A DNA stretch of 63,212 nt, filler included, from Octopus bimaculoides (Eukaryota), in the NCBI RefSeq assembly GCF_001194135.2. It is 3 parts of 3 records of this genome, joined end to end, with 100 filler letters (N's around TTAATTAATTAA, not from the genome) between each part and the next. Parts side by side here need not be neighbours in the genome. Positions count along the whole stretch, not along the records: positions 1 to 13,003 come from NC_068995.1; 2 more parts are not named here. The stretch is one strand, 5' to 3'. A model generated the notes under the pieces. It was not told the DNA's origin. It was given only the letters and a program-made list of their open reading frames with translations, and did no database searches. Shown here one piece after another: positions 1 through 13,003 of the stretch (position 1 is the stretch's first letter; the number at the start of each line of letters is the position of its first letter). The position numbers were made by a program, and so were the translations under genes.

Positions 1-99
<99 letters not shown>

Positions 100-116
100 C
101 ATTATTATTATTATTA

Positions 117-202
<86 letters not shown>
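1..202. repeat. (TAT)n microsatellite
   Basis: Near-perfect trinucleotide tract. Confidence 0.98.
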
Positions 203-206
<4 letters not shown>

Positions 207-330
207 CGAGCTGGCAGAATCATTAGCACGCCAGGTGAAATGCTTAGCGGAATTTCAACTGTATTTACGTTCTGAGTTCAAATTCCACCCATGTTGACTT
301 TGCCTTTCATCCTTTCGGGGACTATAAATT
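203..330 (+). mobile_element. tRNA-related SINE, family A (5' part)
   Basis: gcgagctggcagaatcattagcacgcc...gagttcaaattcc (B-box-like, 274-286)...ttgactttgcctttcatcctttcgggg; recurs many times in the window. Confidence 0.8.
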
Positions 331-1920
331 AACTAATTTGGTGTAATTAAATCTTAAAGTTTGTTTCTGAGCACTGCATATCAACACAACAGGGCATACT
401 TTTCAGATAACTTTCTGCTTAGCCTTTTCCAGCAGTTGGCATTGTCATTTTCCTTTCATTTCTCTCTGGTATTGCCCATGCAGCACTTTCATTTACTAGT
501 TGAAGAGAGAATACATATTCTGCTGAGCTTTTTTTTCTTTGCCCTTCATCATTTCTGAGTGGAGCAGGTGGCTTGTCTATTCGGAATTTGGTGTAATTAA
601 ATCTTAATCTTAAATCTTGTTTCCGAAATTCTTTTGGGCGTGCTACATTTTCACTAAGTATTGTGATATTATTTCTAACCGCAACAAATAAAAGTTCAAT
701 CTGCTATTTGACGTCCCATCCCTGATAGTTTCCATCAATCACAACACAGAACATGCAGCCTATGTGTCATCTTCGACCCTTGTCTCCTTCCACGACTCTA
801 ATAATTCATGCTTTGAGGGGTCTTCTCCTATTTTGATGTTGTTCTTTCCAATATGCTTATACAACCTCATTGGATTATTTTTAAACAAATAGTTACCTTT
901 CAAGGACCCGGATCATTTTTTGAAGCAGTATATAAGGGTGACTTTTCCCTAAATGTCTTCGTTTAACTTCTCAACTACTCCAGCAAACTAAAGTTCACAC
1001 TCCAATTTGCACTGTCTTATTCTCTTTCTCTTTTTAGATGGTTTTGTATCATGATAACCGCTTTTCAAGGTCTCCATTTCAGAAGCGTCGATTTGTTACT
1101 TGATTTTTTCTTGCTACTCTGGCCTTTTATAAGGCATTCCCACACTATTTTTCAGCTGAATGCCACACGTTTTGTTGTGTGGACTGTAGCAGCAGAGTAG
1201 AATATCCCATTGATGCATGTGATATTTACTTCGTATTTGATGCATTTGGTGGCTATGTTCATCTGGAAGATAATTTATTATTTTTTTCACTGTTGTGAAT
1301 CTTAAGATTGTCACTATATTTCATGTCCTTATTTTGGATTTTGATCCGTTCAGTGGCTATTTGTTCTTCAAGTATTCTATTTCAAAATGCCTTCTCTTGT
1401 TAGCAGCATCGATTATTTTCTCTGCAATGGTTTCATCACCAGGGAGAGTATTTAGGTTGTTTCTGATTGTGTGTCTCGTGTTGTTTACTTCTTGCTGACA
1501 CAGCCTCTGTCTGTTAATATTCCAGTTGCAATCGCTTTGTCGTTTCCTAGATCTCATTCTATATTTTATTTTATTTTGTCAAATTCTATGTCGGTTAACA
1601 ATTTCACATATATAATATTTCTTCATACGTTTGCAGTCTATGTTGAGTCTTATGTTAGGATTCTTTTCTCTCCAGATTCTATATGTTTGTTCAGTGTTTG
1701 AGATGCCAGTTGTTTGAAACAAAGCGGTGTAGTAAGCGTGAATGACTTTTTATTTATTATGACACTTGGAACATTTCCGTCTTTGGGTTTACTTTTGCCT
1801 GCAGATGTTGGGCATGGAAAGCCATTAGGAATTGTCCTTTTGTAGGCATCCTCTAGATTCATATTGATGGAGAGGTGTAAACCACTAGCAAACTGTATGC
1901 TCCGTGGCCGGCTCTGCATG
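330..1920 (-). mobile_element. Degraded 5' portion of an R4/Dong-like non-LTR retrotransposon ORF
   Basis: Broken frames give INGIFYSAATV (~1210-1180) and NYLFKNNPMRLYKHIG (~895-850), resembling pre-RT N-terminal motifs of R4/Dong ORFs. Many stops and frameshifts. Confidence 0.45.
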
Positions 1921-2729
1921 GGTTAAGGCGCCCCTTCCCCACTCGAACGAGGACAGATCCAATATAGATTTTGCTTTGTTAAACATTGGCCTGTTACCAT
2001 TAAAACAAAGTTGGTATTAGGATATGGAACTGTCTGTTTGGAGACGACTTTTTAACAAAACACCGCTTCCAAATTCTTTGAATAGATAAGTCTCTTATAT
2101 CGCAATTGCATGAAGCTTACGAACGAAATTCATCTCTATTTTTTTTCATTTTTTCATTTTCTTTTTCTTTTTAACTTTTTTGGGTACAAGTGTCTTCGAG
2201 CATGATAGTGTGCTAGATTAAATTCAGTGATTATTTGCCCCTATCGTGTTCGTGGAAAGTCGTGTTGTTTTTGGCTACTTTTGCTTCGCTTGCAATATGT
2301 GTTTTGTCGGCGCATGTGAGCATGTGTATATGTATGTGTGTATGTGAATGTGCGTGCGTGTGTATGTCTATGTGTGTGTTGTTAGCATTATTTACGTAGT
2401 TTATAAATATTAACATGTACACACGTATGCATAAACAGTTGAATATTTATGCATTTAATTTACGTACATACTGTGCATATAATGGTTTTCTCTCATGGTC
2501 CCTGATGTTGATTTCGATTTTCTGCACATGTCACTCTGAGGTATACACAGAAGAAACAGTGCTTAATATAGCAATTATTTTTTAGTTGATTTGCTTTAAA
2601 AGATCATTTCTCTTAGATTTATTACCAAGTTTTATTTCCATTTCCCATACGTTGTTGGAATTAAATTCGTTTTTTGGAGAGAGCTTCTTGCTGTACGTCC
2701 ATGTTGATTTTTAGCCCGGAGCTAGCTTT

Positions 2730-2986
<257 letters not shown>

Positions 2987-3521
2987 CAAACGAAAGGCAT
3001 TGTTTTGAAGGTCAGATGTTATACAATTTTGTCGTTTTGAAGAAATTGATTTTAGCTTCATTTTTTATCATGTTGTTATTATGCCAACCAACATCCTAAA
3101 AGTCTGTTCGTCGTAGAGAAGTTTTACTCTCAATTCGGTTAAATTTTTCCAAACTTTTTAATAGAGAATATAAATATGTTTATAAAAAAAACTAATATTA
3201 CTTCACAAATGCAATAGACATTTAAATTATCTAACATGCAACACAATAACCATTTTCCACTGCTACCTGTAAACAGAATAAATGAACATCAATTTGAAGA
3301 TCAAGAACAACAGCACCAACAAAAACCACACATTTGAAACATTAGTGAAAGCAATATCAACACTATCCTCACTAACCCCTACTAATGCGGATCGAAACAA
3401 TACCAACAACATTCAGAATGAAAACAACGGCTACAAAGATGTGTATGTAAAGAAGAAAAGTCTAAATTAACGACTAAACACACCTACAATTTCCACCTCC
3501 GCTGCCAGTACCACCATCTTA

Positions 3522-3748
3522 TTTCTTTATTGCCCACAAACGTAGAGGGGACAAACAAGGACAGATAAAGGTATTAAGTCGATTACATCGACTCTAGCGT
3601 GTAACTGGTACTTAATTTATCAACCCCGAAAGGTTGAAAGGCAAAGTCGACTCGGCGGAATTTGAACTCAGAACGTAACGGCAGGCGAAATACCACTAAG
3701 CATTTCGCCCGGCGTGCTAACGTTTCCGCCAGCTTGCCACCTTCTTAA
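3522..3748 (-). mobile_element. Full-length SINE, family A, with 12-bp target-site duplication
   Basis: Same body as 203-330 plus 3' tail; flanked by ACCACCATCTTA at 3510-3521 and 3749-3760. Confidence 0.9.
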
Positions 3749-4419
3749 ACCACCATCTTAAACACCAACAATCCTACCATGAATGGGTTCTCTGATGCCG
3801 TGCACCAGGTAGAAATATTACAATCGCTAGGTCAAGGTTTTTTATAAAAATACTAATACGTATGATTACTTGGTTTGGACAAAACTTTATATATACCAAA
3901 ATCCATCTGATCAGAAGCGAACCTATGGAACTTATAATTTTAAAGCTTGGACTAAAACGTCGGAAAATAGAATTAAGGGAGAAGGTAGTAGCAGATCACT
4001 AACGAAAGTAATCGCAATGGACTTTGGCGCGGCAAAACTAGCCATCGACAAATTCTCCAACGTGAAGCACGAAAGTTAACCCATGGATCAACATGGCAGA
4101 GTAACAACATGTAAACAAATCCACAATCGGTATTTTGCAGTTCACATTGAGTTTAGTTTATTTAATACCAAGGAGAATGGTGCTTTTTTCAGCTGTACTT
4201 ACCAAAAAGTGTACTGTACGAGACGTGTGTCAGAAAGCTAGATGGATTTTAGTGTCTACCTCAACTGCCTGCTTTATCTGTCGAAAAGAAAGGCGGAGTA
4301 TTGTGAAAAACGAAGAAAAGCCGAAGAAATAATGAAAGCGACTGTTGACCTGACGACGGGCAACTTGCCTAGTCTGACTGATTTATGCAACAGGCTTTAA
4401 TTTTCTATGCCTTGCTGAA

Positions 4420-4587
4420 AGTTTGGCATTTCGTCCATCTTAACGTTCTGAGTTCCAACTGAGCCGAGGTCGACTTGACCAGTCATCTTGAAGTGTCGAT
4501 AAAATAAATTTGTGCTGAACACTGGGATCGATGTAATCGACTTACTCCGCTCTCCGAAATTTCTGGTCTTATACCTAACTTCGAAAC

Positions 4588-4590
<3 letters not shown>
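4420..4590 (+). mobile_element. SINE family A copy
   Basis: acgttctgagttccaactgagccgaggtcgact...gtcgataaaataa...ggatcgatgtaatcgact. Confidence 0.7.
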
Positions 4591-4623
<33 letters not shown>

Positions 4624-6530
4624 NNNNNNNNNNNNNNNNNNNNNNNNNNNNNNNNNNNNNNNNNNNNNNNNNNNNNNNNNNNNNNNNNNNNTATACATAT
4701 ATAAATTTATAGACAAACCCGAAGAATTTAAATTACGGAGAAGAGTGACACAAAGAGGTCCTTTTTCATGATAATGATAACTATATAGATAATAATAATA
4801 TATTCTCCATTTAGAGCGACTAAACCTAAACTACTGACTGAAGAAAGATCGGCCGAACCACTGAGAATTGAACACGACATCAATGTTTACATGGCTCCGA
4901 ACGCACTCAATTCATCACAAAACGACAATACTGATACGACATATTGTCGTTCGTTTTGTATTGAGTGTATTACATAACACTTTTACGTAAGTACATCATA
5001 GAAATGGCATTTCTTCTATAAAAGATTTGCTGTTTTAATCGATAAATGCCACGATTCAAGAATAAATATATAAAGTATAAAAACTGTGCCAAAAGCAAAT
5101 ATTGTAAGTGGAATCACTCTTAAACTACCTCCATTCGTACAAATACGCATAAATATTTGCGTGCAAAAATACAAACATGATACGTTCTTGCATATCTATC
5201 CCTGTATCTCTGTATCGACTACACTGTGCGGTGTTACAAAAATTATTTAACTAAATCCATTTTCCATCGTTTTGTAAGTCTTCCCAATGGCCTTTTCCGA
5301 AATCTTGGATAGCATTCGGAAATACTACGGTTCACCTGTTTGTGTGAATTTCTGACATGTCCTACAACTCGGAATATTTATGTATATACACAATGTAGCA
5401 ACTACATATCGGAATGATGTAATATTGTTTATTGAAATTACTTCATCTTACAAAAATTATGAGGCGCTCTTTATAATTCTTATAAGTTGAACTCGTAATG
5501 ACATCAGTTATTCTACCTTAATAATGACAACTTGAATTTATTCACAAATGAAAACAATCATTATGAATATTTTGATTTTGTTATATGGATTACACAAATC
5601 CCTTTGTGACAAATCCACTGAATATACCTGACCATCCACAGGAAATTGTTAATTAGTCACAACCGTGGCATATTCTTTTTTTAATTTAGAGTTTACGAAG
5701 TATTAGTAAACATTTGAATATAGTTAACTTATAATTCGATTTATACCACCCACGCGACAAAAACTATAAATCAGAATTTTTGAAATCAACTGGTTTTTCA
5801 TTTCTAAATATTCTACATTTCTAAATATTCTAAAACTTGACAAGTAAATATCACTTAGCGAAATGCTCTTTTTACTCATTTAACTTCAGTTTCCAATATT
5901 ACTTGTTTTGCATTTAAGGATTTGAGACATACAGAGTGAATTCATTTTAATGATTATTGAAGTACTTTTAAGTTGTACATTTTTTACATCGCGATTCACT
6001 ATTCTGTGAAAATGAAAATTATTTTATGATATACAAATGTGGTTCGCCAACAAAGACAAGAGAAAAAAATCATGATTTTATGTAAGCAACTCTTGGTCAT
6101 AATTTCTCTATAGAATAAACATCAAAATTACTGGCTTAGTATATGGGCACAAATTCTTTCAATTGCACTTGCAAATCAGTATTTCAGGCCTTTTCTCATG
6201 ATATTTTCCTTAACCAGAATTTTTAAAGAAATTATGCATTTATAAAATTTCAGATAGTCATTAAAACATTTCTCAAAAATAATTACTACAATTTCAGTAG
6301 AGTTTGGAGTAATTCGTGACAGTAAATATTTTGGGTATTGGGGACAAATTTGTTTAAAAAAGAATACAAACGCCGCTGGACAAGAAAAAGATGTAATAAT
6401 TTTTTGATATTTTTCTGCGTATCTGCGTATAAAAATACGTGTTTGACAACAATGTTTACTAATTCTTTTCTGTATATATTGTGCCTAAACACACACACAC
6501 ATATATATGTATATACATATATATACACAC

Positions 6531-6573
<43 letters not shown>

Positions 6574-6618
6574 GATATATATAGATATATGTATGTATGT
6601 ATAATTACATATGTCAGG

Positions 6619-7737
6619 TTAGTGGAAAAAGTTAATAATTACAAGAAGAAGAGTAGACCCGAACAAACAAAGTGTGATAAAAAGTGAGAGTCGGTTAAGT
6701 TGTGTGTAATTTAATGATATTTTTCCACATTTCCTTGGCTGAACATTTTCCTTGTATCGATTATCAGAGTTTTGATTCATATTCTTTTCCAGTACTGCGT
6801 GTTGATAGAGCCGACAGATAAAGATGGATCCAACGCAGGAAAGACTGCTGACTGTTGTCAGAAAAAGTATGTAGAGTAGATACAAAGGTATTCCTGACCC
6901 ATCCGTAGTTATCGCTCTCCCACTTTCAACAAGATAGAGAATATTGGTGAGAAAGAGTGTAGTTGAAAATGTAACTTTCTCCCCACTCTCTGCAGGCAAA
7001 AGAAATACGCACATCGTCAGTAATGATAGCAACAAAATCCCTATAATTATCGCAATATTATTCGCAGATGAAGACTGTTCTAACATGATTATTAATTCAA
7101 AACCGTCTGTCGAATTGTCGTCATCATATTTATGACCATCCAGTTGAATATTCCAAATGGTTGTCCATATATTCGATGTGTTAGCTAAATCTACATTTTG
7201 TAACTTCAAGTACGAGACCATTTCATTGGATAACCAAAAATATATTTTACATACATTGAGTGAAAAAGGATATTTGTAAAAGTCAATCGAGCAGTATGTA
7301 CGATAAATACTTCGAATAAAATAGGAGGTCCTTCCGTCATAGCTCACTGTAATATATTCACTTAAACTTGGAATTTTAGTAACTTTTTCTGCATTGCTCA
7401 CAAATATATTCGGTGCCCAAATGGAGTCAGAATTGAATTCTATATGAGTTAGATTGTCATATTTAATGGGATCCCAGCAAAGATATTCGTCTGTCCATCT
7501 AGACTCTATAATTACTTTACTATGTAACATTCCTTCAAACAAATCCAAATTGAATATAACGATTGATTTGAAATATAAATCAATATTTAGATTTTGGGTA
7601 ATATTTCGTACAGGACGAACATCTTTGTTGTAACCTTTCAGAAGAGTATCTCTTAAATCACGGTCAGTTAAATAAGAACTTGAAAATATATGCGGTATAT
7701 ATAAGAGAATGAGTATGCTGCTTCTGATATTCATCAT
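6619..7737 (-). CDS. Intronless divergent nicotinic-receptor-like pentameric ligand-gated ion channel subunit; probable cephalopod chemotactile receptor (CR) family member, 372 aa
   Basis: Stop-free ORF. First ATG is at 7737 (the track's 7740 start is GTG); TAA at 6619-6621. Hydrophobic signal peptide, then LLKGYNKDVRPV, WTDEYLCWDP and IWAPNIF motifs, Cys-loop CSIDFYKYPFSLNVC (7293-7249), M1-FLLPAESGEK-M2, IPL-M3, a ~38-aa M3-M4 loop and a terminal M4. No loop-C vicinal CC; loop-A Tyr and loop-B Trp positions are Ser. The specific paralogue cannot be named without a search. Confidence 0.93.
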   Translation of the reverse strand: MMNIRSSILILLYIPHIFSSSYLTDRDLRDTLLKGYNKDVRPVRNITQNLNIDLYFKSIVIFNLDLFEGMLHSKVIIESRWTDEYLCWDPIKYDNLTHIEFNSDSIWAPNIFVSNAEKVTKIPSLSEYITVSYDGRTSYFIRSIYRTYCSIDFYKYPFSLNVCKIYFWLSNEMVSYLKLQNVDLANTSNIWTTIWNIQLDGHKYDDDNSTDGFELIIMLEQSSSANNIAIIIGILLLSLLTMCVFLLPAESGEKVTFSTTLFLTNILYLVESGRAITTDGSGIPLYLLYILFLTTVSSLSCVGSIFICRLYQHAVLEKNMNQNSDNRYKENVQPRKCGKISLNYTQLNRLSLFITLCLFGSTLLLVIINFFH

Positions 7738-7757
7738 CACGTATGAAAAAAGAATAC

Positions 7758-7780
7758 CTGAAATGAAAATAACATTGTTT
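7758..7780 (-). promoter_or_regulatory. Putative 3' splice acceptor of a 5'-UTR intron of the CR-like gene
   Basis: Minus strand reads ...ttattttcatttCAG|Gtattcttttttcatacgtg ATG: a pyrimidine tract plus CAG/G, 20 nt upstream of the first ATG. Confidence 0.5.
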
Positions 7781-8119
7781 ATTGAAATAGCAAATTAGAT
7801 AAGAGTGTAAGAAGTTAAGGACCGAAACACTTGCCAGTGAGAGTTTAGTATCTAAAGAACTTCTGCCGTTTAGCTCCTTAGAGTGTTAGTTGTCACTGAT
7901 TGATTTGAATAAAGGAGAACAAGACATAAAAGTTAAAAAATTTTTCTAACAGTAATAAATAAGAAATGATCACATTTATCAATGAATTATTAAATAATAC
8001 AGTTTATCATTAATGTCGTATTTAGTTGAGCCTTGAACGAAAGGAGGAATAGAAATATAACTATATTCATAATAAGAAGACAAAACAGCATTGACAACAG
8101 TGAAACCGTATGGCATATT

Positions 8120-8730
8120 ACTAGTCAATGTACATCAGTAGCTCAGATGGAATATAATAGACACCACGACAATATAGCCAGGCTTGTCCATTAGACACTT
8201 TGCAACAAGTATAGACTTGACAGAGCAAAAAATTGGTACGGTTACAAACCTGAAGGCATCGTCGTAAATAAAAATGCAAAGATCCTATGGGAATTTATGA
8301 TTCAGTGCGACAATGAGATAGAGAATAGGAAGCCAGTCAAAGTCTTAATTGAAATAGAAAACAAACTATGCTGGATCGTAGATATAGCATGCCCAGCTGA
8401 TAATAAGGTATTCGATAAGAAAGAAAGAAAAGTCGAGAGATATGACAGGTTAGCTTGGGAGGTTAAGCAGTTTTGGTCGATGAAAAAGGTAGCAGTAGTA
8501 CCAATAATTGTCCGAGCCCTGAGAACAGTGAGAAAAATTTCGAGATGTACAGCAAATATGGGCTGCAATAAGGGTAGAGCACTTGCAGAAAAGAGCACTG
8601 CTTGGAATCACCCGAATACTCTGGAAGCTATTCGAAAGATAAGAGGTGTTACCTTAGTTTATTGGTAGTGAACAGCTGACACCGCAGTACATATCTAGCG
8701 TTAGAAGCTGTGCAGAAGCAATGGTAATAA
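8120..8730 (+). mobile_element. R4/Dong-clade LINE 3' fragment (restriction-like endonuclease domain) with (TAA)n tail
   Basis: RHDNIARLVH..LCNKY..WY..KPE..KILWEF.IQCD..I.NRKP..C.IVDIACP.D..K..K.ERY..LA.EVK..W..VVPIIV.AL, then a short 3'UTR and (TAA)n from ~8722. Confidence 0.85.
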
Positions 8731-8741
8731 TNNNNNNNNNN

Positions 8742-8828
<87 letters not shown>

Positions 8829-8861
8829 TAACAATAATAATAATAATAATAATAATAATAA

Positions 8862-9240
8862 AGATTGAAAATTACAGACTACAAAAAGACGAAACTGCAA
8901 GAATGTCGACTAATAGGAGAGTGACTCATTCCTGTAGTTGGAGAGGCACTTGGAGCATTAACAACCTAATTCGAGAAATACGACAGAGAAATCGGAATTG
9001 ACATTAGAGCAGAGCAAACCGAAACAACTGCGCTGCTGGGGACAGCTAGGATTTTGAAATTGGTACTTGGATGATGAATGTCTCCCGCGATAATTAACAA
9101 CCAAGTAGCAAAGCTTATAATGTGCGCAAAGAGACCCTGTGAGACCTTTGACAGCAGGCTGCTGTCCGCTCTCATAGAATCTACCAGAACAAACAAGATC
9201 GAGCTCTCTGAGAAGTAAAACAACAACAATAATAATAATT
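8862..9240 (+). mobile_element. Second 5'-truncated R4/Dong-like LINE 3' end, starting directly after the (TAA)n tract
   Basis: KIENY..IPVVGEALG..EKY..IGIDI....TALLGTARILKLVL, followed by a 3'UTR and (CAA)n(TAA)n tail at ~9216-9238. Confidence 0.75.
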
Positions 9241-9244
9241 TTGG

Positions 9245-9420
9245 CACTAGGCCAACCATTTCAGTAATGAGGCTAAGTTGATTACATCGACCTCGGTATT
9301 CAAGAGGTACCTATTTTATCAACTCTGAACGGATGAAAGGCAAAATCAATCTGTGCGGAATTTGAACCCTGCTCGGAAGGTCTTTTGTCTCCTGTGCTGA
9401 TGATTCTACTACCTCACCAT
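9245..9420 (-). mobile_element. SINE family A copy
   Basis: ttgattacatcgacctc...atgaaaggcaaaatcaatctgtgcggaatttgaac. Confidence 0.65.
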
Positions 9421-10716
9421 CTTATAAAGAACATTTTTTTAAACTTAATTTCAACTACCTCAAAGAACCGTAACACAATTCATAGGTTTTGGTAGGCAAA
9501 ATAAATAGGAGTTGGAATAGTAAATTTAAGATTGTATATAACACTGCTACTTTGGGAATAAACAATGAATTTGGGCAAAAAAAAAAAAAAAATCTCTTAC
9601 AAGTATATGAAATACAAGCAGAAATTATAAAACGAAGACGCGCAATGATAACTTAATAGGAATACTTAAACTGGAAACAGAATTCTCAAATATCACAGAA
9701 CATTTATTACTAAAGATGTATTAAATATGAAACAGACAGATGGAGTCAAATAAATTACAAAATAAATTCAGAAATTAATACAGAAAACATTCAAATTAAG
9801 TAAAACTACAGAGCATATGATATTTATGAATGCGACATAGAGCGATTCTTAATGAGACTCTATCCAATAGACTAGCTGGAAGCCACTGCCTACCATTATG
9901 ATGAGCGCACATTTGCTTATTTATAAAATGAAATATAATTATGTACCGTAAATGAAACGGAAAAATTCACTTTATCGATTTTCTGTCTATGCCATGTGGT
10001 TCCCAACATGGGTAACGCGTACCTCTGCTGGTTCGCAAAGTTAGTACCGTGTGTCTGTAATCTACATTCAAATTTCGCCAACCCTTATATATATATATAT
10101 ATATNNNNNNNNNNNNNNNNNNNNNNNNNNNNNNNNNNNNNNNNNNNNNNNNNNNNNNNNNNNNNNNNNNNNNNNNNNNNNNNNNNNNNNNNNNNNNNNN
10201 NNNNNNNNNNNNNNNNNNNNNNNNNNNNNNNNNNNNNNNNNNNNNNNNNNNNNNNNNNNNNNNNNNNNNNNNNNNNNNNNNNNNNNNNNNNNNNNNNNNN
10301 NNNNNNNNNNNNNNNNNNNNNNNNNNNNNNNNNNNNNNNNNNNNNNNNNNNNNNNNNNNNNNNNNNNNNNNNNNNNNNNNNNNNNNNNNNNNNNNNNNNN
10401 NNNNNNNNNNNNNNNNNNNNNNNNNNNNNNNNNNNNNNNNNNNNNNNNNNNNNNNNNNNNNNNNNNNNNNNNNNNNNNNNNNNNNNNNNNNNNNNNNNNN
10501 NNNNNNNNNNNNNNNNNNNNNNNNNNNNNNNNNNNNNNNNNNNNNNNNNNNNNNNNNNNNNNNNNNNNNNNNNNNNNNNNNNNNNNNNNNNNNNNNNNNN
10601 NNNNNNNNNNNNNNNNNNNNNNNNNNNNNNNNNNNNNNNNNNNNNNNNNNNNNNNNNNNNNNNNNNNNNNNNNNNNNNNNNNNNNNNNNNNNNNNNNNNN
10701 NNNNNNNNNNNNNNNN

Positions 10717-10756
<40 letters not shown>

Positions 10757-11332
10757 GCACACACACACGTCCACACACGCACGTACACACACATATATAT
10801 CGATATGTACATAGATATATAAATGGATGCGTTGATTAATAAGGAGAGAGAGAAGGTGGCTAAAAGAGTGAGATAGGGAGTGTGATAGTGATAATAGAAC
10901 GAGTGCAGCAAGACAAAAATCAGAACAACTACAGAGAAAACTCGATAAGTGGTTCGGTGGCCAATTAGACGCAACAAAGTAACTTAGACGTCAATAAAAA
11001 TACAGCATATGTTTTTGAGTAATTAAATCCTGATTTCTGTAAATATTAGCAGTTGGGGACATCAGTGAAAATATTTAACAGTTAATTTGTTGAAATTTCT
11101 ATATTTCACTCATAATGACAAGGAACACATACCCTTTTAGTGAGTCAAGAAAGTAGATATTTGAAGGAACAACCAAGGCAATGTGATTAAGAAGTTCGTT
11201 TTATAAACAATTGTTTGCTACCTAGCTAGATAGATAGACATGTAAATAGAGAGACATATAGATAGACAGAGAGATATATAGATAGACAGAGAGACAGATA
11301 AATGTATACATATATATATATATATATATATA

Positions 11333-11589
11333 TAAGAATTTAAGGATTGGAGAAAACGCATGTTATAATTGCATATTTTATTCCTAGTCATAACCTTATC
11401 CATCTATTGTTTTCATAATCGGTCATAATGTCTTACGTCTAAGATGATTCCCATGCTTTCCCTGATGAGAAGGTTACAATTTTAATATCAAAGATCCCTA
11501 TGGATCACACAGGTTGTAATCCTTTGAAACATATGTAGGAATAAAGTATGCAATTATAACATGCGTTTTCTCCAGTCCTTAAATTCTTA
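11333..11589. mobile_element. MITE, ~255 bp, with 54-bp TIRs and TA termini/TSD
   Basis: 11333-11386 taagaatttaaggattggagaaaacgcatgttataattgcatattttattccta is the reverse complement of 11536-11589 with 2 mismatches. Confidence 0.85.
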
Positions 11590-11958
11590 AATATACTCNN
11601 NNNNNNNNNNNNNNNNNNNNNNNNNNNNNNNNNNNNNNNNNNNNNNNNNNNNNNNNNNNNNNNNNNNNNNNNNNNNNNNNNNNNNNNNNNNNNNNNNNNN
11701 NNNNNNNNNNNNNNNNNNNNNNNNNNNNNNNNNNNNNNNNNNNNNNNNNNNNNNNNNNNNNNNNNNNNNNNNNNNNNNNNNNNNNNNNNNNNNNNNNNNN
11801 NNNNNNNNNNNNNNNNNNNNNNNNNNNNNNNNNNNNNNNNNNNNNNNNNNNNNNNNNNNNNNNNNNNNNNNNNNNNNNNNNNNNNNNNNNNNNNNNNNNN
11901 NNNNNNNNNNNNNNNNNNNNNNNNNNNNNNNNNNNNNNNNNNNNNNNNNNNNNNNNNN

Positions 11959-12054
<96 letters not shown>

Positions 12055-12059
12055 ATTGT

Positions 12060-12960
12060 GAAAGGGGTACAATAAACCAGCCGTGAGGAGTGGAATATCT
12101 AACGTTTCGGATTCAAATCTTCGTCAGGGAGCAGAGTAAATGAGAAGAACAAGCGACAAGTCAAACAGAGTTTACATCGTCCTAGCTTGAAAAACTGGCT
12201 GCAACTGATAATGGACGCAGAATAACAGGGGTCGCTAACGGAAAAATAGAAATTATTGGAGAGGGCGTGCAGAAAGGAGAAGGAAAAGGGTAATGGAAGG
12301 AGTAGAGGTAAGTAAATACGGGAAAGTTGAAGAGAGAGGAAGGAGGGAGGAAAAAAAATGTAACAAAGAATTACAAGTAGGTGAAAGGATGAAAGGAATA
12401 AACGTCCATTCATACCTGTTGGGGACAGTGCCAAAATAAAATATGAGACATTGCTCCTTGCGTTTCCGTAGCCGTAGTACAAGGCCATGCCACACACTGA
12501 TCGAATGATTCATAGTGTTGAAGTGGGTGGCGACAGGTTGGCCTGGCATACGTAGCATTATGCTTCAGATGTATTCGCGAAAGCGATCCCCAAGGCGTCG
12601 CCCTGTTTCTCCAATGTAAAGAACGCCGCAGTGCTTGCATATGATGCAATATATGAGACTCGCTGAACAACAGAAGTGGCGTGTTATGTGATATTGCTAA
12701 TTGGGCCGCATGACGGTGGTAATATCGTTAATGTAGAGGCATGTATTACGACGTAGGCGAGAACATTTAAAGATACCTGGTTGTGCAGAGCTGGGAGCTG
12801 CGAAGATTCTAACAAAGAGATTTCTAATACTCCTATCTTTTTTAACAGGCAGGTGGGGTGGTGTTGAAAACATAAGGATGGACGTCAGAAAGAAGAATGG
12901 GTAAGTTGTAGGTGAGTTTGTGCTTTAGGGAGAGAATGGACGGGTAGTAGGTGACAATGG
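12060..12960 (-). mobile_element. Penelope-like element 3' fragment: Cys-rich linker, GIY-YIG endonuclease and terminal hammerhead-like motif
   Basis: PGIFKCSRLRRNTCLYI...HFCCSASLIYCIICKHCGVLYIGETGRRLGDRFREY*..PVATHFN..HS..RKRKEQCLIFYFGT; one in-frame stop. Confidence 0.9.
12100..12127 (-). ncRNA. Hammerhead-like core motif at the 3' end of the Penelope-like element
   Basis: CTGACGA-A-GAT(TTGA)ATC-C-GAAAC-GTTA, directly downstream of the GIY-YIG fragment. Confidence 0.45.
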
Positions 12961-12962
12961 AG

Positions 12963-13003
<41 letters not shown>

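What the first reader, a model, noticed from the sequence alone, without database searches (positions are those of the whole stretch)
6900..7545. Concerted loss of the conserved Cys-loop gating residues in an otherwise intact subunit
By-eye alignment to muscle alpha1 numbering: loop-2 E45 to Leu (NLDLFEG vs NVDEVNQ), Cys-loop D138 to Ser (YPFS vs FPFD), pre-M1 R209 to Gln (MLEQSSS), M1 P221 to Gly (IIIG vs IIP), and M2-M3 23' Pro to Thr. E45, D138 and R209 form the established salt-bridge network coupling binding to gating, so losing all three together looks compensatory rather than random decay. There are no stops or frameshifts, and the Cys pair, GEK and 9' Leu are kept. Inference: a subunit with a rewired gating interface, or an obligate heteromeric/modulatory or non-gating partner that tunes other CRs.
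Basis: partly seen in the sequence, partly recalled or inferred. Interest (0 to 1): 0.72.

Follow-up and report, generated by a model that had tools for sequence, protein, structure and literature searches.

The report
Octopus chemoreceptor subunit lacking gating-coupling residues
This is an intact, evolutionarily maintained octopus "taste-by-touch" receptor subunit that has lost several amino acids that nearly all channels of this superfamily keep to link ligand binding to pore opening, so it probably either couples the two in a different way or works only as a partner of other subunits.

Summary
Window 6619..7737 (-) is one uninterrupted coding exon of Octopus bimaculoides, chromosome CM046615.1. 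It encodes a complete nicotinic-receptor-like subunit of the cephalopod chemotactile receptor (CR) clade.

Three independent alignments place Leu, Ser, Gln, Gly and Thr at muscle alpha1 E45, D138, R209, P221 and P265 (23').

- E45 is absent from all 18 CR-clade representatives, including the working channels CRT1 (Phe) and CRB1 (Leu). It is not part of a gene-specific loss.
- R209Q is found in O. bimaculoides and O. sinensis, but a third octopod keeps Arg. The loss was stepwise: D138S and P221G came first.

The "concerted" idea survives an unbiased test. Of 28 columns at least 80% conserved in 146 relatives, this orthogroup departs at 7. Six of the 7 lie at the interface between the extracellular and transmembrane domains (D138S, Q140N, R209Q, P221G, P265T/S, S268G).

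The gene is not a pseudogene. The ORF is intact in three species, dN/dS is 0.28-0.47, and it is 0.11 across M1-M3.

An unrelated cephalopod CR-like protein (P0080) shows the same set of losses.

Function is untested. The favoured reading is an accessory heteromeric subunit, or a rewired coupling interface.

The parts
6619..7737 (-). Complete coding sequence in one exon: 372 aa from ATG 7737-7735, stop at 6619-6621. The mechanical ORF begins one codon earlier, at GTG 7740.
   Evidence: ORF list and sequence. Pfam Neur_chan_LBD 7.9e-30 plus Neur_chan_memb. Best PDB matches are octopus CRT1 at 1e-44 and squid CRB1 at 6e-29. The window is 100% identical to O. bimaculoides CM046615.1.
7758..7759 (-). 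Splice acceptor AG (tttcag|GTATTC). The coding exon starts at 7757, 20 nt upstream of the ATG, so at least one 5' exon lies outside the window.
   Evidence: Sequence. The NCBI model P0002 joins an exon about 18 kb upstream to this acceptor. The acceptor is conserved in O. sinensis and in species X.
7540..7542 (-). Loop 2 (beta1-beta2) Leu at the alpha1 E45 position, in the motif NLDLFEG.
   Evidence: Glu is absent here in 18 of 18 CR-clade sequences, so this change is not specific to the gene.
7249..7293 (-). Cys-loop, CSIDFYKYPFSLNVC. Ser (7261-7263) replaces the invariant Asp (alpha1 D138), and Asn replaces Q140.
   Evidence: Ser is shared by all three orthologues.
7075..7077 (-). Pre-M1 Gln (CAG) at the invariant Arg position (alpha1 R209), in the motif MLEQSSS.
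   Evidence: O. sinensis also has Gln (CAG); species X keeps Arg (AGG).
7000..7068 (-). M1 helix. Gly (7039-7041) replaces the superfamily-conserved M1 Pro (alpha1 P221).
   Evidence: The AF2 model has a helix at residues 224-246. Alignments. Gly is present in all three orthologues with three different Gly codons.
6919..6984 (-). Pore-lining M2 helix, with GEK (6976-6984; -1' Glu) and the 9' Leu (6949-6951) retained.
   Evidence: M1-M3 dN/dS is 0.11.
6886..6918 (-). M2-M3 linker. Thr at 23' (alpha1 P265; 6907-6909), Gly at the alpha1 S268 position (6898-6900), and the gating Pro (alpha1 P272; 6886-6888) retained.
6772..6885 (-). M3 helix, followed by an unusually short M3-M4 loop of about 17 residues.
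   Evidence: The AF2 model has helices at 285-322 and 340-371. There is a gap of about 45 columns against other CRs in alignment A1.
6625..6720 (-). M4 helix.
   Evidence: AF2 model. Foldseek matches to whole nAChR and CRT1 subunits.

Best explanation
The gene encodes a real, selectively maintained subunit of the cephalopod chemotactile-receptor branch of nicotinic-like pentameric channels. Its interface between the extracellular and transmembrane domains has been remodelled.

How the interface changed (shown or directly inferred from sequence):
- In CRs generally, the conserved Arg-centred salt-bridge network is already reduced. E45 is gone and E175 is mostly gone, leaving one pair: the Cys-loop Asp and the pre-M1 Arg.
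- In this orthogroup that last pair was dismantled stepwise. Asp became Ser and the M1 Pro became Gly in the common ancestor of the three species.
- Arg became Gln later, in the O. bimaculoides / O. sinensis lineage.
- Changes at Q140, 23' Pro and S268 accompany these.

What was kept:
- The beta-sandwich core.
- The Cys-loop YPF.
- The M2-M3 gating Pro.
- The pore (GEK, 9' Leu), which is strongly constrained.

Most likely mechanism (inferred, not shown): the subunit still assembles and lines a cation pore but does not itself drive binding-to-gate coupling. It would act as an accessory partner in CR heteropentamers, tuning conductance, kinetics or ligand sensitivity while the other subunits do the coupling.
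For: Identity and completeness:
- Searches show a full pLGIC subunit.
- CRT1 8eis_A matches with TM-score 0.79 (normalised to the target) and rmsd 3.8 A.

Placement in the CR family:
- The NJ tree puts the orthogroup inside an 18-member cephalopod CR clade.
- The gene lies about 200 kb and about 300 kb from two CR genes on the same chromosome.

Substitutions.

Selection:
- Intact orthologous ORFs exist in O. sinensis (88% aa identity) and in a third octopod (81%).
- NG86 dN/dS is 0.28, 0.28 and 0.47, all significantly below 1 (p = 2e-12, 3e-13 and 0.002).
- By region, M1-M3 is 0.11, the ECD 0.26 and the ICD plus M4 0.54.

Interface concentration:
- 6 of 8 conserved interface columns changed, against 1 of 20 elsewhere, and that one is the conservative V255L.
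- The orthogroup and P0080 are the extreme outliers among 149 sequences. They have 5-6 interface departures; the median is 0 and the next highest is 4.

Stepwise order: species X has Arg encoded by AGG.

Literature:
- D138K and D138A are non-functional (PMC2151658).
- At R209, only Q, K and H work on the wild-type background; A and N work on E45R or E45L backgrounds (PMC2151659).
- R209Q alone gives no expression, but E45R+R209Q is close to wild type (PMC10899235).
- Conventional mutants of the M1 Pro are non-functional in nAChR, 5-HT3R and GLIC (PMC4813548).
- In the non-agonist-binding beta1 subunit, coupling positions hardly affect gating while M2 does (PMC3806828). This mirrors the constraint pattern seen here.
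- CRs form both homomers and heteromers (PMC11526382; bioRxiv 10.1101/2025.03.03.641191).
Against: - There is no expression or electrophysiology evidence. The only octopod contigs outside the two reference assemblies are genomic, not cDNA, and the exact protein is not on record elsewhere.
- Known accessory nicotinic subunits such as beta1 still keep the Asp, the Arg and the Pro. There is therefore no precedent that an accessory role frees these residues.
- dN/dS for the closest species pair is fairly high (0.47).
- Only three species were available.
- The NJ topology on sequences about 25-30% identical is weak.
- The 26 O. bimaculoides CRs were sampled only as 50%-identity cluster representatives, so another CR with the same changes cannot be strictly excluded.
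Confidence: 0.5

Rival explanations
1. It is a self-sufficient, possibly homomeric, ligand-gated CR channel. Coupling has been rewired to non-ionic contacts: loop-2 Leu-Phe and Cys-loop Tyr-Pro-Phe packing against the retained M2-M3 Pro. Gly in M1 would supply the helix flexibility normally given by Pro.
For: - The elements that physically push on the linker are kept: YPF, the hydrophobic residue at the V46 position, and P272.
- The same interface residues are fixed across species with different codons, e.g. Gly GGG/GGA/GGT and Ser TCA/TCC. This argues for selection on the new state.
- Mutant-cycle work shows the salt bridge is not strictly essential once its partners change (PMC2151659, PMC10899235).
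- An unrelated CR-like protein, P0080, has the same combination in an intact ORF.
Against: - D138A and D138K, conventional M1-Pro mutants and R209Q alone are each loss-of-function or non-expressing in canonical receptors (PMC2151658, PMC4813548, PMC10899235).
- No functional data exist for this subunit.
- In current work only a subset of CRs could be probed functionally in expression systems (bioRxiv 10.1101/2025.10.28.685082).
Confidence: 0.25
2. It is a gene under relaxed constraint on its way to pseudogenisation, or one that has lost channel function and is kept for something else, such as assembly or a chaperone or decoy role.
For: - dN/dS is 0.47 between O. bimaculoides and O. sinensis.
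- R209 was lost only recently.
- The M3-M4 loop is very short.
- The octopus-CR extra Cys pair is missing.
- The NCBI models in both species truncate the ORF through internal donors.
- No expression evidence was found.
Against: - The 371-372-codon ORF is intact in three species, with no indel apart from one N-terminal codon, at dS up to 0.38.
- dN/dS is significantly below 1 in every pair and is 0.11 over M1-M3.
- All 20 conserved non-interface columns are kept or changed only conservatively.
- Coding identity is 85%, against about 68-73% in the flanks.
Confidence: 0.15
3. The substitutions are an alignment artefact, and the canonical residues are present a few positions away.
For: None.
Against: - Three alignment methods agree.
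- The positions are anchored by invariant YPF, both Cys, GEK and the LLP turn.
- There is no Arg or Lys in the 21 residues before and into M1, and no Pro in M1 (sequence).
Confidence: 0.01

Closest known systems
Octopus bimaculoides CRT1 (PDB 8EIS, 9E6B), the chemotactile receptor for terpenes
   Same: - Best sequence match among solved structures (E = 1e-44).
- Same fold (TM-score 0.79 normalised to the target).
- Intronless coding region.
- No ACh aromatic box and no vicinal Cys.
- E45 already replaced (Phe in CRT1).
- Same M2 motif (GEKV...T.FL.N..YLV).
- A CRT1-type gene (P0015) lies about 200 kb away on the same chromosome.
   Different: - Only about 30% identical.
- CRT1 keeps the Cys-loop Asp, the pre-M1 Arg, the M1 Pro and the 23' Pro (alignment); this gene has Ser, Gln, Gly and Thr.
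- CRT1-type CRs carry an extra Cys pair (alpha1 Y93 position, and 5 residues after the Cys-loop) that this gene lacks.
- This gene's M3-M4 loop is much shorter.
Squid CRB1 (PDB 8EIZ)
   Same: - CR-clade member.
- Leu at the E45 position, exactly as here.
- Also lacks the octopus-type extra Cys pair, judged from its squid-type relative P0038.
   Different: - Keeps Asp, Arg, M1 Pro and 23' Pro.
- Weaker match (E = 6e-29).
P0080, an unnamed 385-aa CR-like ORF on ENA assembly ERZ21867824, contig ctg118071l
   Same: Intact single-exon CR-clade protein that departs at the same conserved interface columns: D138S, Q140V, R209N, P221F, S268T, plus F137L.
   Different: - Only 24% identical to this gene and placed in another subclade, so the loss is probably independent.
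- Keeps the 23' Pro.
- Has three further departures outside the interface.
- Source organism unknown.
Muscle nAChR beta1, a non-agonist-binding accessory subunit
   Same: It is a model for a pore-lining subunit whose own ECD-TMD coupling positions contribute little to gating while its M2 contributes strongly (PMC3806828). That parallels the constraint pattern here (M1-M3 dN/dS 0.11).
   Different: - By my own knowledge of the family (not checked here), beta1 still retains the Cys-loop Asp, the pre-M1 Arg and the M1 Pro.
- It is an ACh-receptor subunit, not a chemoreceptor.

Membership tests
Pentameric ligand-gated ion channel (Cys-loop receptor) superfamily | Neurotransmitter-gated channel ligand-binding domain followed by the transmembrane region | tested here: met
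   Pfam PF02931 at 7.9e-30. PF02932 scores 27.7 bits, just under its 28.1 cut-off. There are 250 PDB pLGIC matches.
Pentameric ligand-gated ion channel (Cys-loop receptor) superfamily | Signature disulfide loop: Cys, 13 residues, Cys, containing (F/Y)P(F) | tested here: met
   C150-SIDFYKYPFSLNV-C164.
Pentameric ligand-gated ion channel (Cys-loop receptor) superfamily | Beta-sandwich ECD plus four transmembrane helices M1-M4 | tested here: met
   AF2 model with pLDDT 74 and helices at 224-246, 252-273, 285-322 and 340-371. Foldseek TM-scores 0.64-0.79 to nAChR and CRT1 chains.
Pentameric ligand-gated ion channel (Cys-loop receptor) superfamily | Near-invariant coupling hallmarks: Cys-loop Asp, pre-M1 Arg, M1 Pro. 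These are conserved features, not formal membership criteria. | tested here: not met
   Ser, Gln and Gly here. In 146 relatives the counts are D 144, R 142 and P 142.
Cation-selective nicotinic-type subunits | Glu at -1' in the GEK motif at the cytoplasmic mouth of M2, and 9' Leu | tested here: met
   ESGEK and L264.
Acetylcholine-binding nicotinic subunits | Aromatic box (alpha1 Y93, W149, Y190, Y198) and the loop-C vicinal Cys pair | tested here: not met
   Ser, Ser, gap and Thr at those positions, and no CC. The same holds for all CR-clade sequences.
Cephalopod chemotactile receptors (CRs) | Closest relatives are CRT1- and CRB1-type receptors rather than canonical nAChRs | tested here: met
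   CRT1 1e-44 and CRB1 6e-29, against alpha7 3e-26. It falls inside an 18-member CR clade in an NJ tree. The tree is only a rough distance tree.
Cephalopod chemotactile receptors (CRs) | Genomic location with other CR genes, and a coding region in a single exon | tested here: met
   Same chromosome, about 0.2 and 0.3 Mb from P0015 and P0021. Single coding exon. No CR lies within +/-10 kb.
Cephalopod chemotactile receptors (CRs) | Octopus-type extra Cys pair in the binding-pocket region. It co-varies across CRs; that it forms a disulfide is my inference. | tested here: not met
   Ser and Trp here. Most octopus-type representatives have Cys and Cys. P0021 (Leu/Gly) and squid-type P0038 (Tyr/Tyr) also lack both.
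Cephalopod chemotactile receptors (CRs) | Expression in sucker sensory epithelium | not testable with these tools
   No transcript evidence could be retrieved.
Cephalopod chemotactile receptors (CRs) | Channel activated by poorly soluble contact chemicals | not testable with these tools
   Needs electrophysiology.

The most novel reading that the evidence does not exclude
A pentameric channel subunit lineage kept by natural selection has dispensed with the superfamily-invariant Cys-loop Asp / pre-M1 Arg salt bridge and the M1 proline, yet still takes part in ligand gating through a different, non-ionic coupling mechanism. The same solution has arisen at least twice in cephalopod chemoreceptors (this orthogroup and P0080).
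Probability: 0.3. Interest if true: 0.7.

Novelty: new variant of a known kind. Interest (0 to 1): 0.45.

Why it matters
The Cys-loop Asp, the pre-M1 Arg and the M1 Pro are conserved from bacteria to humans. Individually they are loss-of-function sites in every channel of this superfamily that has been tested.

A natural subunit lacking all three, yet under purifying selection, is a ready-made experiment. It can show which parts of the coupling machinery are truly indispensable, which sets of changes compensate for one another, and whether "silent" subunits add to the combinatorial coding of octopus taste-by-touch receptors.

There is also a practical point. The current NCBI models of this gene in both Octopus species are truncated, so the gene may be missing from CR catalogues.

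Tried and rejected
Searches that gave nothing useful:
- A profile search of the 5.8-billion-protein index with a CR alignment returned only 4 hits, because the candidate list was saturated by generic nAChR words.
- A search with the distant orthologue P0001 found no further orthologues. Only three species are therefore available.
- Exact look-ups of the full-length protein (372 and 371 aa) found nothing on record, so there is no transcript evidence.
- The Logan contigs of species X are colinear with O. sinensis genomic DNA through the intron. They are genomic, not cDNA.
- A literature search for the SRR accessions found nothing, so species X is unidentified.
- The primary CR papers (van Giesen 2020, Allard 2023, Kang 2023) are not held. 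The gene could not be mapped to a published CR number.
- A Biopython NJ run timed out and was replaced by my own NJ code.

Ideas rejected:
- Pseudogene.
- Alignment artefact.
- E45 as part of a gene-specific concerted loss.
- A tandem paralogue array within the window or within +/-10 kb.

Weak evidence:
- The raw association of D138 loss with R209 loss across all domain copies is significant (Fisher p = 5e-5). It rests on only about two independent lineages besides this one, so I give it little weight.
Full report
WHAT IS THERE

The piece (window 1-13003) is 100% identical to Octopus bimaculoides assembly GCA_001194135.2, chromosome CM046615.1, at about 38.25 Mb. It is AT-rich and full of microsatellites and assembly gaps.

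Its only convincing gene is an uninterrupted ORF at 6619..7740 on the minus strand. A splice acceptor (tttcag|GT, AG at 7759-7758) sits 20 nt upstream of the first ATG at 7737, so the 372-residue coding sequence lies in a single exon preceded by at least one 5' exon.

The product has the Pfam ligand-binding domain of neurotransmitter-gated channels (7.9e-30) and the transmembrane region (27.7 bits, just below the 28.1 cut-off). Its best matches among solved structures are:
- octopus chemotactile receptor CRT1, 1e-44
- squid CRB1, 6e-29
- alpha7 nAChR and 5-HT3A, about 1e-26

An AlphaFold2 model (pLDDT 74) shows the N-terminal helix, the beta-sandwich and four transmembrane helices. It superposes on nAChR and CRT1 chains with TM-scores of 0.64-0.79.

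CHECKING THE OBSERVATION

I then aligned it in three ways:
- query-anchored phmmer against 158 relatives
- MAFFT of 14 CR-like sequences
- MAFFT of 149 full-length domain copies

All three agree:

| alpha1 position | Residue here |
|---|---|
| E45 | Leu |
| D138 | Ser |
| R209 | Gln |
| P221 | Gly |
| P265 (23') | Thr |
| P272 | Pro (kept) |

Codon coordinates were verified. The assignments do not depend on small shifts. There is no basic residue anywhere in the pre-M1 stretch, no Pro in M1, and Ser directly follows the invariant YPF inside the Cys-13-Cys loop.

HOW UNUSUAL IT IS

An exhaustive HMMER scan of 1.84 billion cluster representatives gave 4,819 relatives, and I analysed the best 150. 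In the 146 full-length copies outside this orthogroup:
- D138 is Asp in 144
- R209 is Arg in 142
- P221 is Pro in 142 (two of the three Phe calls are one-residue shifts)

E45 is different. It is Glu in only 82 of 146, and in none of the 18 sequences of the cephalopod CR clade, where it is L, V, I, M, F, T, Y or S. The characterised homomeric channels CRT1 and CRB1 have Phe and Leu there. The E45 "loss" is therefore ancestral to CRs and says nothing about this gene.

The alpha1 E175 position, the third acidic partner of R209 in the tripartite salt bridge described in PMC10899235, is also mostly non-acidic in CRs. In ordinary CRs, then, only the Asp-Arg pair of the network is left.

ORTHOLOGUES AND SELECTION

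The NCBI model for this gene is a truncated 286-aa protein, P0002, named "unc-29". It leaves the ORF at an internal donor in M1 and joins an exon at window 3173..3099.

Two orthologues were found:
- The O. sinensis locus (L006) carries an intact 371-codon ORF, 88% identical, although its NCBI model (P0010) is cut to 177 aa.
- A third octopod, known only from Logan assemblies of SRR11869384-94 (genomic contigs), has an intact 371-codon ORF, 81% identical.

Nei-Gojobori estimates:

| Pair | dS | dN/dS | Fisher p for dN/dS below 1 |
|---|---|---|---|
| O. bimaculoides - species X | 0.35 | 0.28 | 2e-12 |
| O. sinensis - species X | 0.38 | 0.28 | 3e-13 |
| O. bimaculoides - O. sinensis | 0.12 | 0.47 | 0.002 |

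By region, for O. bimaculoides against species X, M1-M3 is 0.11, the ECD 0.26, and the cytoplasmic loop plus M4 0.54. Coding DNA is 85% identical, against 68-73% in the flanks.

This is not a pseudogene, and the pore domain is the most constrained part.

ORDER OF EVENTS

All three species have Leu (E45), Ser (D138) and Gly (P221). The Ser and Gly codons differ synonymously between species. At R209, O. bimaculoides and O. sinensis have Gln (CAG) but species X has Arg (AGG).

The rest of the CR clade carries Asp and Pro at these two sites, apart from P0080, and nearly always Arg at R209. Parsimony therefore gives D138S and P221G in the common ancestor and R209Q later. So "all three lost together" is wrong in detail. 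A stepwise dismantling, in which the Arg becomes dispensable once its last acidic partner is gone, fits well.

IS THE PATTERN CONCERTED?

I listed every alignment column that is at least 80% conserved in the 146 other sequences. There are 28.
- The orthogroup is identical at 21 of them, including every conserved ECD-core position, both Cys, YPF, the LLP turn, SGE and the 9' Leu.
- It departs at 7: D138S, Q140N, R209Q, P221G, V255L (conservative), P265T/S and S268G.
- Six of the eight conserved interface columns depart, against one of twenty elsewhere (Fisher p = 5e-4).

When all 149 sequences are ranked by interface departures, the three orthologues (6, 6, 5) and one other protein, P0080 (6), stand apart. 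The median is 0 and the next highest value is 4.

P0080 is an intact 385-aa single-exon CR-clade ORF on an ENA contig that also carries the CR-type gene P0016. It is only 24% identical to this gene and sits in a different subclade. The same set of positions has therefore probably been abandoned twice. Because the lineages involved are few, it remains suggestive.

WHERE IT SITS IN THE FAMILY

A distance tree places the orthogroup inside an 18-representative cephalopod clade. That clade contains the CRT1-type O. bimaculoides protein P0015, P0021 and squid-type sequences. The gene lies about 0.2 Mb and 0.3 Mb from P0015 and P0021 on the same chromosome. No other CR lies within 10 kb.

Like all CRs, it lacks the ACh aromatic box and the vicinal Cys pair. 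Unlike most octopus-type CRs, it lacks a co-varying extra Cys pair, and its M3-M4 loop is very short.

MECHANISM

Published mutagenesis shows each change alone is damaging in canonical receptors:
- D138K and D138A are non-functional (PMC2151658).
- R209Q fails to express in oocytes (PMC10899235).
- The equivalent Asp and Arg are required in ELIC and GLIC (PMC4778918).
- Conventional substitutions of the M1 Pro abolish function in nAChR, 5-HT3R and GLIC (PMC4813548).

The same papers show the effects depend on context:
- Several non-Arg residues at 209 work on E45A, E45R or E45L backgrounds.
- E45R+R209Q is close to wild type.

In the non-agonist-binding beta1 subunit, coupling positions barely affect gating while M2 does (PMC3806828). 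CRs are reported to form both homomers and heteromers (PMC11526382; bioRxiv 10.1101/2025.03.03.641191).

Taken together, my preferred reading (confidence about 0.5) is a pore-lining accessory subunit of CR heteromers that does not drive coupling itself. The main rival (0.25) is a self-sufficient channel whose coupling relies on the retained hydrophobic contacts: loop-2 Leu-Phe, Cys-loop YPF and the M2-M3 Pro. A decaying or non-channel gene (0.15) is disfavoured by the selection data but is not excluded without expression evidence.

Shown here: the substitutions, their rarity, their concentration at the interface, their order, and purifying selection. Inferred: assembly, pore function, and the accessory role.

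NOVELTY AND SCORE

The family is known, and the gene exists in NCBI only as a truncated model. What is new is the recognition of a conserved CR orthogroup, and a second convergent lineage, lacking the superfamily's invariant coupling residues.

I rate it a new variant of a known kind, with interest 0.45. It is a good experimental lead for channel biophysicists and for octopus sensory biology, but it rests on sequence alone.

Noticed in passing
window 3099-3173 and 7012-7758 (-); L007 10001-10060: The NCBI O. bimaculoides model of this gene (P0002, 286 aa, named unc-29) starts at an ATG in an exon about 18 kb upstream. It leaves the ORF at an internal GT in M1 (about 7012) and ends in a small exon at 3173..3099, which removes M2-M4. 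The O. sinensis model (P0010, 177 aa) is truncated at a different internal point and uses a non-homologous upstream exon. Both look like mis-modelled versions of a single-exon CDS.
   Followed up: partly
window 7396-7398 and 7234-7236 (-); residues S115 and W169 in 373-aa numbering: Most octopus-type CR representatives carry two extra, co-varying Cys. One is at the alpha1 Y93 position (motif xCN) and one is 5 residues after the second Cys-loop Cys. This orthogroup has Ser and Trp instead. P0021 (Leu/Gly) and squid-type P0038 (Tyr/Tyr) also lack both. The pair probably forms a CR-specific disulfide near the ligand pocket.
   Followed up: partly
L010 10001-11158 (protein P0080; ENA ERZ21867824 ctg118071l): A second, unrelated (24% identity) intact CR-like ORF from an unidentified cephalopod has the same interface losses: D138S, Q140V, R209N, P221F, S268T, plus F137L. 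It lies on a contig of the same recorded length (194,260 bp) as the one carrying the CR-type gene P0016.
   Followed up: partly
protein P0039 (Bagarius yarrelli, TSK87574.1): A catfish protein annotated as 5-HT3A contains three tandem receptor copies. All three have Val at the Cys-loop Asp position and Ser, Ile or Pro at the pre-M1 Arg position. This is another case of joint loss outside the cephalopods.
   Followed up: no
window 6721-6771 (-): The M3-M4 cytoplasmic loop is only about 17 residues, which leaves a gap of about 45 columns against other CRs in the alignment. It is also the fastest-evolving part of the protein (dN/dS 0.54 for the loop plus M4).
   Followed up: partly
window 8297-8668 (+): A 123-aa ORF (…IACPADNKVFDKKERKVERYDRLAWEVKQFW…) has no Pfam match. 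From memory it resembles the conserved tail of some metazoan retroelement ORFs. This was not verified.
   Followed up: partly
window 1-203, 2728-2983, 6501-6603, 8742-8861, 11978-12054; N runs at 2832-2841, 4624-4691, 8732-8741, 10105-10716, 11599-11958: Long microsatellites are present: (TAT)n, (TTC)n, (ATT)n, (AT)n directly 3' of the stop codon, (TAA)n and (AGAG)n. There are five assembly gaps, and several mechanical ORFs in the list are artefacts of these features.
   Followed up: no
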